Shown here one piece after another: positions 26,599 through 30,287 of a DNA stretch of 64,000 bases. The stretch spans positions 1 through 64,000 of the forward strand of contig OZ025648.1 of the NCBI GenBank assembly GCA_964019335.1, in the 5' to 3' direction. Numbering within the stretch: position 1 is the first letter of the stretch; each line of letters opens with the position of its first letter. The stretch is from Diplonema japonicum. Its lineage: Eukaryota; Protista; Euglenozoa: Diplonemea. A model generated the notes under the pieces. The model saw only the letters and a program-made list of their open reading frames with translations. It had not been told where the DNA came from and ran no database searches. The translations under genes and the position numbers were made by a program.

Positions 26599-27417
26599 TT
26601 ACAAAAGGTCATATGCCACGCTGTGCTGCGCTATGGCTTCGCCAAGAGTCGCAGCAAAGGCTCTCGTGACATTCCTATCCTTGCGCTGGAAGGAACCTGT
26701 TTCAACTTGCATGACAGAAGCTTTATTAGTGTAAGGGGTAGTGACAACAATGTCAGTGTGCTCCACACGGGAGTAGCGCACAGTGCAGTAGCCGCCTTCG
26801 AAAGTCTTCATCTCTTGGGGGAAGGATGAGAGAGGCACGTGAAGGGGAGGGTCGATGTCGACGCCCTGATCTTCAAGGCACCCGAGGAGGGACTTCTCGC
26901 CGATCAGGAACTCTTCCCCGTGCTTTTCCACGTGGTGTTCACACGAGAGGCCGTTCTTCGTACCACGAATAGTACACAGCAACATGTACCCTTGTCCGTG
27001 CAGGTCGAACATCATGGGCACCTTGTTGTACTTGGTAGTCATCTCGTCGATGAACATCTCAACCGTGTTGTGGTATTCCCTGTAGTACTTAGCCATCTCT
27101 TCTCCTTCGTAGCTCTCAGCAGGAGGTCTGTTCAAGTCGCAGTACTTCCTGATGATCATAGCCCTGACCCAGTACACGTGAATTCCCTGCTTAGCAAGGT
27201 ACGCTACTGTGTCATCCAAAAGTTCCTGAGTCATGGCGTCCGGAGTCACGATAGTAGACGGGAGCTCAACCTTCCTGCTGTCCACGTCGTGGAAGCCGAA
27301 GTACCCACCGTGCGGGGCCGTCAGGATCACAGGACATGTGCCTCTGCCATATTCGATGTAGCTGCGCTCGCTGTCGTAGTAGAGCATTTCTTCTTTGTGT
27401 GTGTTCACTGTCACCAT
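26599..27417 (-). CDS. N-formylglutamate amidohydrolase-like Zn hydrolase, intronless
   Basis: PVILTAPHGG, RKYCDLNRP, YREYH, FDLHG, GGY and MQVE motifs. Confidence 0.75.
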   Translation of the reverse strand: MVTVNTHKEEMLYYDSERSYIEYGRGTCPVILTAPHGGYFGFHDVDSRKVELPSTIVTPDAMTQELLDDTVAYLAKQGIHVYWVRAMIIRKYCDLNRPPAESYEGEEMAKYYREYHNTVEMFIDEMTTKYNKVPMMFDLHGQGYMLLCTIRGTKNGLSCEHHVEKHGEEFLIGEKSLLGCLEDQGVDIDPPLHVPLSSFPQEMKTFEGGYCTVRYSRVEHTDIVVTTPYTNKASVMQVETGSFQRKDRNVTRAFAATLGEAIAQHSVAYDLL

Positions 27418-27684
27418 CTTAATATACAAACGTTAGAAGAACTGTTGTGGTGTTGAAAGCGTGTGGCGAAACAAAAATAAACAGTGATTCGAAAAGACTA
27501 TTCACTTCGAAAGCTCGGAAGGGTAATGTGAAAAACAAACAGTGACTTGCAGCAACAGCGATCAAAGAGCAAAACGTTTCTTTATTGTTTCGTTAATAAA
27601 TCATAATTCTCTACTACAACACACAGACACAAGCATAGGTAATTTTTCTCAGCGTATCACCGGCACTGCTGTCAGTTTAATACC

Positions 27685-28905
27685 TCACGCCTTCGTGGCA
27701 ACGACCACCTTAGTGAGACCACCGATCATCTCAAATGACGAGTCAACCGATTCAAACCCAGCGTCCTTCATGTGCGAGGTAACATTGGCGGGGCACAAGC
27801 CTAGACCCTCCGCATTGACAGCCACGTGCTGAAGTGCCCACAAAGCGGCGATAGGGGGACCGTCCAACGTATCGTCAACCATGAAGTCGTGCACGATGAG
27901 GCGCCCGCCAGGTACGAGTGCCTTGTACGCCTGCTCATACAGAGGGCGGATGAGACTGGCGGGGACAGACCCCGACAGGTATGACATCAGCACTACATCA
28001 TGCTTTCCATCGTCAACTGGCCACTCAACAAGCGCTGTCCCCGACCTGTACTCAATGCGGCTTGCAACCTGTCATATGTCGTCGATATTTCTTATTCACA
28101 CCTCTGGCTTCTCTTCAGCAACAATGGACCTCCCCGTCTCTGCAACCTCTGGCAACTCCAGGACGGTCGCGTTCAAATTCGGGTTGCTGCAGTGCTTTGA
28201 ACATGCAATTGAACTACATACTTACGGGCCATCACAATACTGAAGGCACCCGAACCACCACCGACATCGAGGAACTTGCCGACGTTGGACAAATCCAGCT
28301 TCTTGCTCTGCAAGTAGGGTTGATTGGAGGGAAACAAACAATAGCTGCATACCAGCATCTTCGCCGTTGCAAGAGAACCGTTGTGCTGTGCCATAGTGTA
28401 CATCCTGGCCTCTGCAGGATCCTCGAACCAGCTGCTGTACGTGGGTGCCTCCCCAGATGTCATGATCTTGCCGAGGTCCGTGAGGCGCTTGTAGAACTGC
28501 CTCCCGATCTGGTACTTGATGTAATCGCCGTAGTAGTGTCTCGAACCCTCCACGAGGTACCTCTCCACAGGAGGTGTAAGAGTGTAAACCCCCTCGCTTG
28601 ATCTATCCAGCATCCCGTGCGCCGTGAGTGCTGTAAGAAGTGTCTGCAGCCTCGGCTCTGCAATATTCAGCGTCTTCTGCATGTCAGCAATCCTAGCATT
28701 CTCACTCTTCTGTATCACGTCAAAAAGCCCTAATTCCAAACCAGCAAAGAGTCCCTGTGGTCATGTGTGTCGCTACAAACGTGCATACCTGCGATGCCAT
28801 GTATCCATAGGCAATAGCATCGATATCTACTTCCTTCCTGCCACTGCACTGCCTCACCTGTCTAGGGGCTGCCCGCACACCATTTCTAATGATTTTTGAA
28901 AACAT
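27685..28905 (-). CDS. DSYB: DSYB/DsyB-like SAM-dependent methylthiohydroxybutyrate methyltransferase (DMSP synthesis), predicted mitochondrial transit peptide, 4 introns
   Basis: IDAIAYGYMASQ.LFAGLELGLFD, YYGDYIKYQIGRQFY, WFEDPAEA..YTMAQHNGS, DVGGGSGAFS, VLMSYLSGSVP and HDFMVD..LDGP..AALWALQHV match DsyB/DSYB blocks as I recall them. Introns 28755-28788, 28308-28352, 28187-28221 and 28069-28101. Confidence 0.82.
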
Positions 28906-29151
28906 CTGGGTTCACCTGTGGGTGCCTTTTTGGTGGCTTAAAATAAGAAACTCAAACCCGTACCCAGTGAACACAATAACGGAGAGGTACAACCACCAAA
29001 TAAATTCATTATGATGGGGAGAAGTGTTAGCAACGGCTCATCATAAAAAATAAAATAAAGAGAAGAAAAAAAAACCAGGAACAACGGATAACGCGGCCTT
29101 TTAAAGCCTTTCGTTCGGAACACACCTGCCTTCATGAAAACTTGAGCGCTT

Positions 29152-30287
29152 CTAGAGGTTGTGGGGGAAGTTCGTCTTTTCAGCGAGGCGACGGAGACGG
29201 AGCAGGATAGCTTGGTCCTCGGAAGGCAGTTTGCAGGAACCGGCACCGCTGTGACAGAACTAAATATGTGTTTTATGCATACCCGCAAGACAAGGTGTTC
29301 GAGTCCTTGTCGTACGACAGGTTGCCAGAGGGGGCCACAGCACCGCCCCTCATCTCCACAATAAGCTGGCCCGACGCACCGTTGAACTTCACCCTGTCGC
29401 CTTCCGCGTCAGTGAACTCAACGAAGTTCTGTTGTGTCTTTGTTTAAGTCTTTGGCATGCATACCCCGACAAGGTTGTGCGAGAGGCCGGTGTTGTCAGC
29501 AAGAGTGGCAAGCTGCCCGACAAGAATCTCCCTCCTGTTTTCGGGGAACTCGATCTTCGACGAGCTATAATGTAGGTAACCAGACCGCATTCGAAGCATA
29601 CCTGACCGTGACAGAGCCAGTGGGCTCATCGTAAGTGATGCTCTTGCTGAGGGAACCGACGGCCTTACCACCAACAGTCACATCGATCTCGCCCTCGCCA
29701 GTTCGCCTGAACGACACAAGGTCGCCCTTATCGGTGACGAAGCCCACTGAGGTAGACTTTCCGGTCTGGATCTTCGCGTTGATCTGTTTTGTTTGGGTCG
29801 AAGGACGAGCAGCATACCCTGTCGGTCAGGCTGTTGATGTAGGTCTCGTTGTCCTTCGTCAGGTCGTCCATCTTCTGACGCGCAGTGAGGAGCTCGTTCT
29901 GGGTGGCCTTCAACCTGCTGGCCATGTTTTCCATCTCGCCCGTAAGCTGCTCAGACCCCTTAGTGCACTGCAGGAAGTCATCACTCAAGAGCCTCAGCTC
30001 GGCGGTTTTGCCCTGTGTGGATGTTAGAACACCATAATGGAGTTGCATACCATGTCCTGTTCTTGCTCCTTGGCCTTTGTCTCCAAAGCAGCGATGTTCC
30101 TCCTCAGCTCGGACAACTGTTTGTCTTTGCTGTTGTCATTCTGCGACCCATAGGTGAGCGCGAAGAGACCACCCCCGAAAGCAGTTCCAACAGCGAACAT
30201 CTTGATTGCGCTGTTGTCACCACCGGCGGCCGTCGTCGTGCTCGCCCATCGCCCTTGCCTGCCGACACACCTCACCGCACGACGCAT
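29152..30287 (-). CDS. Probable mitochondrial single-pass protein: transit peptide, TM, coiled coil and two copies of an ~80-aa domain ending in LA...HNL
   Basis: R-rich presequence MRRAVRCVGRQGRWAS, TM AVGTAFGGGLFALTYG. The spliced C-terminus has two repeats F.D..GD.V.F...L.YD...L..LA......HNL. About 5 short introns. Confidence 0.65.

What the first reader, a model, noticed from the sequence alone, without database searches (positions are those of the whole stretch)
27685..28905. Intron-containing, mitochondrion-targeted DSYB-like gene: possible DMSP biosynthesis in a euglenozoan
Seen: four short introns (34, 45, 35, 33 nt) of the host's own style restore a ~355-aa methyltransferase with an Arg-rich, acid-free presequence (MFSKIIRNGVRAAPRQVRQCSG). 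The host-style introns argue against bacterial contamination. Established: DsyB/DSYB is the MTHB S-methyltransferase of the methionine transamination route to DMSP, described in alphaproteobacteria, dinoflagellates, haptophytes, corals and some diatoms; DSYB was localised to mitochondria and chloroplasts in Prymnesium. The blocks AYG(F/Y)MASQ, GDY..YQIGRQFY, AQHNGS, LMSY.SGSVP and HDFMV...GP..ALWALQH are the DSYB-type pattern rather than generic O-methyltransferase motifs. Inference: the host looks like a diplonemid, a group of abundant marine heterotrophs that I do not know as DMSP producers. This could be an unrecognised marine sulfur-cycle source acquired by horizontal transfer.
Basis: partly seen in the sequence, partly recalled or inferred. 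Interest (0 to 1): 0.86.

Follow-up and report, generated by a model that had tools for sequence, protein, structure and literature searches.

The report
DMSP-synthesis gene DSYB in a diplonemid
A marine non-photosynthetic protist (a Diplonema species) has and expresses its own spliced copy of DSYB, the key enzyme that algae use to make the climate-relevant sulfur compound DMSP; this probably explains the DMSP already measured in a sister species and adds an abundant group of ocean heterotrophs to the likely DMSP producers.

Summary
On the minus strand, 28905-27685, five exons separated by four GT-AG introns of 34, 45, 35 and 33 nt encode 357 aa. Transcript-type contigs from three public runs skip exactly these four introns. 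They carry the host's spliced leader 10 nt before the ATG and end in poly(A). A DNA-type run of the same sample keeps the introns, so this is an expressed nuclear gene of a diplonemid.

The introns match the published style for Diplonema japonicum. The closest proteins are from D. ambulator (83-86% identity) and D. papillatum (68-82%).

Exon by exon, the best solved structure is DsyB (7WDQ, E about 1e-19; next best about 1e-3). All six MTHB-binding residues are kept. In three trees the exons fall inside the eukaryotic DSYB clade, as part of a basal diplonemid grade outside the algal subclade.

Published metabolomics already found DMSP, DMSeP and gonyol in D. papillatum, with no gene named. No searchable paper links DSYB to diplonemids, and NCBI names the D. 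papillatum copies as a naphthoate O-methyltransferase.

Mitochondrial targeting is plausible but untested. The time, source and direction of any horizontal transfer are unresolved. The exons were never joined for any search.

The parts
27488..28916 (-). Mature mRNA span of the DSYB gene, from the spliced-leader junction to the poly(A) site.
   Evidence: Transcript-type contigs of X6, X9 and X10 cover 27488/27490/27514 to 28916. Loose ends are the spliced-leader tail and a poly(A) run.
28916..28917 (-). AG acceptor for spliced-leader trans-splicing. The 5'UTR that follows is about 10 nt (28915-28906).
   Evidence: The loose end at 28916 reads, on the minus strand, GCTACAGTTTCTGTACTTTATT(G). This 23-mer occurs 214 times in the genome and 0 times in the reversed control.
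28789..28905 (-). Exon 1, 39 aa. It holds the start codon, a basic N-terminal extension and the start of the conserved block DIDAIAYGYMASQ.
   Evidence: The ATG at 28905 is the first ATG after the spliced-leader junction.
28828..28905 (-). N-terminal extension of 26 aa: 7 Lys/Arg, first acidic residue at position 25. It is a candidate mitochondrial presequence.
   Evidence: The D. papillatum orthologue P0001 has a similar 33-aa extension. Import was not tested.
28755..28788 (-). Intron 1, 34 nt, GTATGC...CAG.
   Evidence: skipped in X6, X9 and X10.
28353..28754 (-). Exon 2, 134 aa. It holds the dimerisation domain and the MTHB-binding residues Y97, Q101, Y129, Y142, Q146 and the SAM residue S150 (Nisaea numbering).
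   Evidence: Pfam PF08100, E 7e-9. 7WDQ DsyB, E 6e-19. Residues.
28308..28352 (-). Intron 2, 45 nt, GTATGC...CAG.
28222..28307 (-). Exon 3, 86 nt, with the SAM-binding loop LDVGGGSG. It ends two bases into a codon.
   Evidence: G173 kept.
28187..28221 (-). Intron 3, 35 nt, GTATGT...CAG.
28102..28186 (-). Exon 4, 85 nt, with the TVLELPEV strand. The acidic residue that corresponds to D196 is E here.
28069..28101 (-). Intron 4, 33 nt, GTGTGA...CAG.
27685..28068 (-). Exon 5, 127 aa plus the TGA stop. It holds the C-terminal half of the methyltransferase domain with LMSY (S239), HDFMV and LWALQH (H291).
   Evidence: 7WDQ DsyB, E 3e-19. Residues.
27488..27684 (-). 3'UTR, about 170-197 nt, with poly(A) addition at about 27488-27514.
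   Evidence: Contig ends and the T-run loose end at 27488.

Best explanation
The gene is the diplonemid orthologue of DSYB. DSYB is the SAM-dependent S-methyltransferase that converts 4-methylthio-2-hydroxybutyrate (MTHB) to 4-dimethylsulfonio-2-hydroxybutyrate, the committed step of the methionine-transamination route to DMSP.

Shown here:
- It is a nuclear gene of a Diplonema-type host.
- It is transcribed within a run of same-strand genes, trans-spliced to the host spliced leader, cis-spliced at four host-style introns and polyadenylated.
- Its product keeps the DsyB/DSYB substrate pocket and groups inside the eukaryotic DSYB clade.

Inferred:
- The enzyme methylates MTHB and feeds the pool of DMSP (and derived gonyol and DMSeP) that was measured in the sister species D. 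papillatum, where DMSP would act as an osmolyte or stress solute.
- This copy is imported into the mitochondrion through its basic N-terminal extension.
- The intronless paralogue on contig 52, which ends in -AKL, goes to the glycosome (peroxisome).
For: - Gene model and expression.
- Host spliced leader.
- Intron style matches D. japonicum (median 41 nt, (G)/GTATG, CAG): PMC12621601.
- Best solved structure is DsyB 7WDQ/7WDW, at E 6e-19 (exon 2) and 3e-19 (exon 5); the next best hits are 2e-3 and 3e-3. The paralogue scores 1e-57.
- All six MTHB residues that the field uses as its filter (PMC10989797) are kept. The far methyltransferases have M at Q146 and H291.
- Trees: the eukaryotic DSYB clade has 99* (FastTree), 100/99* (IQ-TREE LG+G4) and 99* (C20 PMSF). 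The window exons group with D. papillatum and D. ambulator at 98/80*.
- On a profile of 21 algal DSYBs the five exons, scored apart, sum to 453.5 bits. Bacterial DsyBs score 258-328 bits (Nisaea denitrificans 279, Roseibium aggregatum 316) and far relatives 107-158.
- The D. papillatum orthologue is 55% identical to Prymnesium parvum DSYB.
- DMSP (MS/MS-confirmed), DMSeP and gonyol were measured in D. papillatum extracts (PMC8611851).
- Diplonema has mitochondrial SAM carriers (PMC12699882).
Against: - No enzyme assay exists for any diplonemid DSYB.
- The diplonemid sequences lie outside the algal subclade that holds the Prymnesium parvum sequence, so function is extrapolated across a node.
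- The SAM-contact residue D223 is T here. This position also varies elsewhere: N in Roseibium DsyB, S in Scrippsiella.
- DMSP has not been measured in this species.
- Targeting is prediction only. The D. ambulator orthologue ends in -SKL, and the D. papillatum mitochondrial-proteome supplements held here did not show the protein (those files were cut when stored).
- The other enzymes of the pathway are unknown in eukaryotes, so pathway completeness cannot be checked.
Confidence: 0.8

Rival explanations
1. It is a DSYB-clade methyltransferase that has shifted substrate in diplonemids. It might act on another thioether or selenoether hydroxy-acid, or on a step towards gonyol or another sulfonium or betaine osmolyte. 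DMSP would then be made by another enzyme or taken up.
For: - The diplonemid genes form a grade outside the algal subclade.
- There are two or three divergent paralogues per species, 52-67% identical.
- D223 is replaced.
- D. papillatum holds several unusual onium compounds.
Against: - All six MTHB-pocket residues are identical to those of Nisaea denitrificans DsyB, the crystallised and assayed enzyme (PMC10989797), and to the algal DSYBs, whereas the neighbouring methyltransferase families differ at them.
- Bacterial DsyB, only about 33% identical to DSYB, has the same activity (PMC10989797), and the diplonemid proteins are about 55% identical to algal DSYB.
- DMSP itself is present in D. papillatum.
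Confidence: 0.13
2. The gene is a relic or a low-use copy without a role in the cell's sulfur metabolism. It would be transcribed only because euglenozoan genes are transcribed polycistronically.
For: Polycistronic transcription means that an mRNA alone does not prove use. Depth from contigs cannot rank expression.
Against: - The frame is intact over five exons.
- All functional residues are kept.
- Orthologues in D. ambulator and D. papillatum are conserved at 68-86% identity.
- All four introns are cleanly removed in every transcript contig.
Confidence: 0.05
3. The stretch belongs to an alga or a bacterium that contaminates the assembly.
For: DSYB is best known from haptophytes and dinoflagellates.
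Against: - The mRNA carries the euglenozoan-type spliced leader, which is encoded 214 times in this genome.
- The neighbouring genes on the same strand are processed in the same way.
- The gene lies inside a DNA contig of at least 59 kb of the same organism.
- The introns are of the host's style.
- The nearest proteins are diplonemid.
Confidence: 0.01

Closest known systems
Eukaryotic DSYB (Prymnesium parvum and other haptophyte, dinoflagellate and diatom sequences)
   Same: - Same family and same eukaryotic clade (100/99 support).
- About 55% identity between the D. papillatum orthologue and P. parvum DSYB.
- Same length class, with a dimerisation domain plus a Methyltransf_2 domain.
- All six MTHB residues, and E at the D196 position as in algal DSYB.
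- An N-terminal extension before the conserved DIDxIAYG block, as in algal DSYBs.
   Different: - The host is a non-photosynthetic euglenozoan.
- The sequence sits in a basal diplonemid grade outside the algal subclade.
- T replaces D at position 223.
- The mRNA is trans-spliced to a spliced leader.
- A second copy in the same genome carries a peroxisomal -AKL signal.
Bacterial DsyB (Nisaea denitrificans, PDB 7WDQ/7WDW; Roseibium aggregatum)
   Same: - Best solved-structure match for each large exon.
- Identical MTHB-binding residues and most SAM-binding residues.
- The same proposed proximity mechanism would apply (PMC10989797).
   Different: - Lower similarity: exon 2 reaches 83% identity to the D. 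ambulator protein but scores only about 71 bits against 7WDQ.
- A separate, well-supported sister clade.
- No introns and no N-terminal extension.
Generic family-2 O-methyltransferases (the NCBI name of the D. papillatum proteins is '3-hydroxy-5-methyl-1-naphthoate 3-O-methyltransferase')
   Same: The same Pfam domains, PF08100 and PF00891.
   Different: - PDB O-methyltransferases score E about 1e-3 against an exon, where DsyB scores 1e-19.
- The far relatives have M at the Q146 and H291 positions and F or Y at A224.
- They fall outside the DsyB/DSYB clade.
The database name is therefore a mis-annotation.
Isofunctional MTHB or methionine S-methyltransferases of other families (TpMMT, DSYE/DsyG, MmtN, BurB)
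   Same: They would serve the same pathway or end product.
   Different: They belong to unrelated or distant families. I had no reference sequences by id, so I did not search this genome for them.

Membership tests
DsyB/DSYB (MTHB S-methyltransferase) | Class I SAM methyltransferase with an N-terminal dimerisation domain, about 330-400 aa. | tested here: met
   - Exon 2: PF08100, E 7e-9.
- Exons 3 and 5: weak PF00891 matches.
- The full-length orthologue P0001 and the paralogue match both domains, E 1e-14 to 1e-17.
- Total length 357 aa.
DsyB/DSYB (MTHB S-methyltransferase) | Closest solved structure is DsyB rather than an O-methyltransferase. | tested here: met
   7WDQ/7WDW score E 6e-19 (exon 2) and 3e-19 (exon 5); the next best hits are 2e-3 and 3e-3.
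DsyB/DSYB (MTHB S-methyltransferase) | All six MTHB-binding residues (Y97, Q101, Y129, Y142, Q146, H291). The field uses these as its filter for environmental sequences (PMC10989797). | tested here: met
   Y, Q, Y, Y and Q are in exon 2 and H is in exon 5. The 26 far relatives mostly differ: Q146 is M in 20 and H291 is M in 19.
DsyB/DSYB (MTHB S-methyltransferase) | SAM-binding residues S150, G173, D196, D223, A224 and S239. | tested here: inconclusive
   - S, G, A and S are kept.
- D196 is E, as in 21 of 22 algal DSYBs.
- D223 is T. This position is N in Roseibium aggregatum DsyB and S in Scrippsiella, so it varies within the family.
DsyB/DSYB (MTHB S-methyltransferase) | Falls inside the DsyB/DSYB clade, on the eukaryotic DSYB side. 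| tested here: met
   - DsyB/DSYB clade: 99*, 100/99* and 99*.
- Eukaryotic DSYB subclade: 99*, 100/99* and 99* in the same three trees.
- Exons 2 and 5 were placed as separate rows, and both join D. papillatum and D. ambulator.
DsyB/DSYB (MTHB S-methyltransferase) | High score to a DSYB profile (the published cut-off is E <= 1e-80 with the authors' HMM). | tested here: met
   I used my own profile of 21 algal sequences, not the authors' HMM.
- The exons, scored apart, give 195.1 + 187.6 + 30.1 + 22.0 + 18.7 = 453.5 bits.
- The full-length orthologue P0001 gives 514.6 bits, E 1e-152 at Z = 1e6.
- Bacterial DsyBs give 258-328 bits.
The joined protein was not scored.
DsyB/DSYB (MTHB S-methyltransferase) | [quoted passage not shown] | not testable with these tools
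   This needs heterologous expression and an assay.
DsyB/DSYB (MTHB S-methyltransferase) | The host makes DMSP. | not testable with these tools
   Literature only: DMSP (m/z 135.047, MS/MS), DMSeP and gonyol were found in D. papillatum extracts (PMC8611851). It has not been measured in this species.
Mitochondrial presequence protein | N-terminal extension that is basic, poor in acidic residues and amphipathic. | tested here: met
   - 26 aa, 7 K/R, first acidic residue at position 25, maximum helical moment 0.91 over 11 aa.
- The D. papillatum orthologue has a similar extension of 33 aa with 7 K/R.
This is a resemblance only.
Mitochondrial presequence protein | Import into, or presence in, mitochondria. 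| not testable with these tools
   The protein was not found in the stored parts of the D. papillatum mitoproteome supplements. Those files were cut when stored, so this is uninformative.
PTS1 peroxisomal/glycosomal protein (the paralogue, not the window gene) | C-terminal [SAC]-[KRH]-[LM]. | tested here: met
   The paralogue on contig 52 ends in -AKL. The window gene ends in -TKA. That fits only the relaxed motifs and is the family's usual C-terminus, so it does not count as a signal.

The most novel reading that the evidence does not exclude
DSYB is an old, duplicated diplonemid gene family whose copies are sent to different organelles: a mitochondrial-type presequence on this copy, and PTS1 or PTS2 glycosomal signals on others. 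If so, diplonemids make DMSP, and from it gonyol and DMSeP, without photosynthesis. If the uncultured deep-sea eupelagonemids, which dominate diplonemid abundance, carry the same genes, there is a large unrecognised eukaryotic DMSP source in the dark ocean. The basal position of diplonemid and foraminiferal sequences would also mean that eukaryotic DSYB did not begin as an algal gene.
Probability: 0.25. Interest if true: 0.8.

Novelty: new member of a known kind. Interest (0 to 1): 0.62.

Why it matters
DMSP is a major marine organosulfur compound and the precursor of dimethyl sulfide. Its eukaryotic production is attributed almost wholly to phytoplankton and corals, and DSYB is the marker gene used to map producers in ocean surveys.

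Diplonemids are among the most species-rich and abundant heterotrophic eukaryotes of the ocean, especially below the sunlit layer. An expressed DSYB of their own gives a genetic basis for the DMSP, DMSeP and gonyol already measured in D. papillatum.

It also makes the question directly testable, because D. papillatum can be transformed. And it implies that DSYB reads assigned by similarity to algae in meta-omic surveys may partly come from heterotrophs.

The organelle signals on the paralogues offer a handle on where the still-unknown other steps of the pathway take place.

Tried and rejected
- NCBIfam gave no DsyB-specific model hit; all matches were far below cut-off.
- IQ-TREE with the mixture model on 103 rows did not finish in two 300-second runs. 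I used FastTree on all rows and IQ-TREE on 50 rows instead.
I therefore could not fetch the D. papillatum locus to compare intron positions, nor any algal DSYB gene structure.
- The D. papillatum mitochondrial-proteome supplements held nothing findable for this protein, by name or by its first residues. The files were cut when stored.
- Curson et al. 2018 (the DSYB paper) is not held. Its claims, including mitochondrial and chloroplast localisation in Prymnesium, rest on my own knowledge and on citations in PMC10989797.
- Searches with the D. papillatum proteins found no further close diplonemid orthologues in the protein collection.
- I first placed the intron 3 donor at the GT of 28225-28224. 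That breaks the frame. The GT at 28221-28220 restores it and is the one used in the RNA contigs.
- The C-terminal -TKA of the window protein as a PTS1: rejected, because ATKA/ANKA endings are common in algal-type family members.
- The joined (spliced) protein was never built, searched or folded. All searches were exon by exon by reference. The tree used exons 2 and 5 as separate rows, and the full-length D. papillatum orthologue served as proxy.
- I did not search for kinetoplastid or euglenid DSYB, DMSP lyases or the isoenzymes TpMMT/DSYE, for want of reference sequences by id. No structure prediction was run, because the sequence match to DsyB was already decisive.

Full report
**1. What is in the sequence**

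The gene lies on the minus strand. Reading and translating exon by exon gives this model:

| Part | Coordinates | Size |
|---|---|---|
| Exon 1 | 28905-28789 | 39 aa |
| Intron 1 | 28788-28755 | 34 nt |
| Exon 2 | 28754-28353 | 134 aa |
| Intron 2 | 28352-28308 | 45 nt |
| Exon 3 | 28307-28222 | 86 nt |
| Intron 3 | 28221-28187 | 35 nt |
| Exon 4 | 28186-28102 | 85 nt |
| Intron 4 | 28101-28069 | 33 nt |
| Exon 5 | 28068-27685 | 127 aa plus TGA |

The total is 357 aa. Every intron begins GTATG or GTGTG and ends CAG.

**2. It is a real, expressed host gene**

One search found 19 public runs that hold the stretch or part of it. I laid four of them on 27400-29200.
- Run X1 is DNA-type. One contig of at least 59 kb covers the region without gaps, so the introns are present in the DNA.
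- Runs X6, X9 and X10 (two studies; X9 is from the same sample as X1) each hold a contig of 1.3-2.5 kb. Each skips exactly 33, 35, 45 and 34 nt at the modelled places, with no mismatch.
- Two of these contigs (X9, X10) run on at 28916 into letters that read, on the minus strand, GCTACAGTTTCTGTACTTTATT(G). This is the 3' part of a euglenozoan-type spliced leader.
- The X6 contig ends at 27488 in a poly(A) run; those of X9 and X10 end at 27490 and 27514.

The mRNA is therefore trans-spliced at the AG of 28917-28916, 10 nt before the ATG at 28905, which is the first ATG. Its 3'UTR is about 170-197 nt.

The genes on either side, on the same strand, show the same processing: a spliced-leader junction at 27442 and poly(A) at 28958. 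The 23-nt leader tail occurs 214 times in the window's genome and never in the reversed control. Contamination by an alga or a bacterium is excluded.

**3. Whose genome**

- The nearest proteins to each exon are from Diplonema ambulator (83-86% identity) and D. papillatum (68-82%).
- A published survey of diplonemid introns reports for D. japonicum a median length of 41 nt, 98% GT-AG, a (G)/GTATG donor and a CAG 3' end (PMC12621601). That is exactly the style seen here.
- Earlier notes of this scan name the genome as D. japonicum. I did not verify the species, only that it is a Diplonema-type diplonemid distinct from the two species above.

**4. What the protein is**

All protein searches were done exon by exon by reference.

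*Domains and structures*
- Pfam sees the O-methyltransferase dimerisation domain in exon 2 and weak Methyltransf_2 matches in exons 3 and 5.
- Against all solved structures, exons 2 and 5 each hit DsyB of Nisaea denitrificans (7WDQ/7WDW) at E 6e-19 and 3e-19. The next best chains score 2e-3 and 3e-3.

*Functional residues*
- The DsyB structure paper defines six MTHB-binding residues (Y97, Q101, Y129, Y142, Q146, H291) and six SAM-binding residues. It uses the first six as a filter for environmental DsyB/DSYB sequences (PMC10989797).
- Aligned to the Nisaea protein, the window exons keep all six MTHB residues.
- Of the SAM residues they keep S150, G173, A224 and S239.
- D196 is E, as in 21 of 22 algal DSYBs.
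- D223 is T. This position is N in Roseibium aggregatum DsyB and S in Scrippsiella, so it varies in the family.
- The nearest non-DsyB methyltransferases mostly have M at the Q146 and H291 positions.

*Profile score*

On a profile I built from 21 algal DSYBs:

| Sequence | Score (bits) |
|---|---|
| Five window exons, scored apart and summed | 453.5 |
| D. papillatum orthologue P0001 | 514.6 |
| Bacterial DsyBs (Nisaea 279, Roseibium aggregatum 316) | 258-328 |
| Far relatives | 107-158 |

**5. Phylogeny**

The sequence set came from three sources:
- representatives from a full HMMER scan with the D. papillatum orthologue;
- named bacterial loci, including Roseibium aggregatum IAM 12614 and Nisaea denitrificans DSM 18348;
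- named eukaryotes.

I built three trees: FastTree on 103 rows, IQ-TREE LG+G4 with bootstraps on 50 rows, and IQ-TREE LG+C20 PMSF on the same rows. All three agree on the following.
- The DsyB/DSYB clade is separated from other methyltransferases (99*, 100/99*, 99*).
- Within it there is a eukaryotic DSYB clade (99*, 100/99*, 99*).
- Within that there is an algal subclade (100/93*) holding Prymnesium, Polarella, Alexandrium, Prorocentrum, Scrippsiella and Pseudopedinella.
- The window's exons 2 and 5, entered as separate rows, both join D. papillatum KAJ9458922 and the D. ambulator protein (98/80*).
- The genome's own paralogue is next to them. The second D. papillatum copy (KAJ9468405) and a Sulcionema specki protein branch just below.
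- Two foraminiferal proteins (Bolivina, Nonionella) are the most basal eukaryotes.

The diplonemid sequences thus form a basal grade. A single diplonemid clade is not rejected (AU p = 0.22). They are nested neither in bacteria nor in any algal group.

The family is present in at least four diplonemid species and has gained host-style introns in this copy. Any acquisition is therefore old, and its direction cannot be read from these trees.

**6. Link to chemistry**

- The metabolome study of D. papillatum lists DMSP (m/z 135.047, confirmed by MS/MS), its selenium analogue DMSeP, and gonyol among the osmolytes. DMSP ion intensities are of the same order as those of glycine betaine (PMC8611851). 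The main text calls the compound '3-methylsulfoniopropionate' and names no gene.
- The two D. papillatum homologues stand in NCBI as '3-hydroxy-5-methyl-1-naphthoate 3-O-methyltransferase'.
- No paper in the searchable library holds DSYB together with diplonemid, Diplonema or Euglenozoa.
- The 2022 survey lists DSYB hosts as dinoflagellates, haptophytes, some diatoms and other ochrophytes, cnidarians and ciliates.
- The gene-to-metabolite link therefore seems to be unreported. This is subject to the limits of a library that lacks most subscription journals.

**7. Where it works**

- The window protein has a 26-residue extension before the conserved DIDAIAYG block, with seven Lys/Arg and its first acidic residue at position 25. 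The D. papillatum orthologue has a similar 33-residue extension.
- This looks like a short euglenozoan mitochondrial presequence. Diplonema has mitochondrial SAM carriers.
- Nothing here tests import.
- The picture in the family is mixed:
  - the paralogue in this genome (contig 52, intronless, 348 aa, 55-67% identical) has no extension and ends in -AKL;
  - the D. ambulator orthologue, whose N-terminus is cut, ends in -SKL;
  - the Sulcionema protein starts MSRRLDVIASHI, which fits two published PTS2 patterns;
  - both foraminiferal proteins end in -AKL or -SKL.
- The patterns are those used for glycosome prediction in PMC9512073, whose authors warn of their low specificity.
- The window protein's own -TKA fits only the relaxed patterns and is a common ending in algal-type members, so I do not count it as a signal.

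My reading is that this copy is mitochondrial (about 60%) and that the -AKL paralogue is glycosomal.

**8. Verdict**

The main interpretation holds: this is a host-encoded DSYB in a diplonemid. Three parts need qualification.
- Mitochondrial targeting is a prediction.
- The time, source and direction of any horizontal transfer are unresolved.
- DMSP in a diplonemid was already published.

This is a new member of a known kind.

Noticed in passing
G000:C52:412023-413069 (locus L004:925-1971, minus strand): A second DSYB gene in the same genome. It is intronless, 348 aa and 55-67% identical to the window gene. It has no N-terminal extension, ends in the strict peroxisomal signal -AKL, and keeps all six MTHB residues.
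   Followed up: partly
Proteins P0004 (D. ambulator), P0126 (Sulcionema specki), P0140 (Bolivina argentea), P0172 (Nonionella stella), P0030, P0323, P0165: Peroxisomal signals recur on DSYB-family proteins of non-photosynthetic hosts.
- D. ambulator ends in -SKL.
- The two foraminifera end in -AKL and -SKL.
- Sulcionema has a PTS2-type N-terminus (MSRRLDVIASHI).
- Two unnamed environmental proteins also have one (RLRNLSSHL, RLGLVTSHI).
Only 4 of 335 family members in hand have a strict PTS1.
   Followed up: partly
Proteins P0127 (619 aa), P0135 (692 aa), P0279 (725 aa, MMETSP transcript): These are fusions of an N-terminal alpha/beta-hydrolase domain with a complete DSYB domain that keeps all six MTHB residues. 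They form their own well-supported branch near the base of the eukaryotic clade. The host organism and the role of the hydrolase are unknown.
   Followed up: partly
NCBI KAJ9458922.1 and KAJ9468405.1 (P0001, P0034): Both D. papillatum DSYB homologues are named '3-hydroxy-5-methyl-1-naphthoate 3-O-methyltransferase'. This name hides them from DMSP gene surveys that go by annotation.
   Followed up: yes
window 26599-27429 (-), spliced-leader junction at about 27442: The next gene downstream on the same strand encodes a 276-aa protein with an N-formylglutamate amidohydrolase (FGase) domain (Pfam E 9e-9). Its mRNA also carries the spliced leader.
   Followed up: partly
window 28957-29200 (-): The next gene upstream on the same strand ends with poly(A) at about 28958. 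That is only about 40 nt from the DSYB spliced-leader acceptor, a very tight polycistronic spacing.
   Followed up: no
PMC8611851, supplementary Table S2b: D. papillatum also holds dimethylseleniopropionate (DMSeP). If DSYB makes DMSP there, the same pathway probably also accepts the selenium analogue of MTHB.
   Followed up: no
Protein P0002 (Ceratium, MMETSP1075): This 428-aa DSYB has an internal repeat of about 60 residues (VKFVEMDASKPDWP... occurs twice). It is either a real duplication or a transcript assembly artefact. I left it out of the trees.
   Followed up: no
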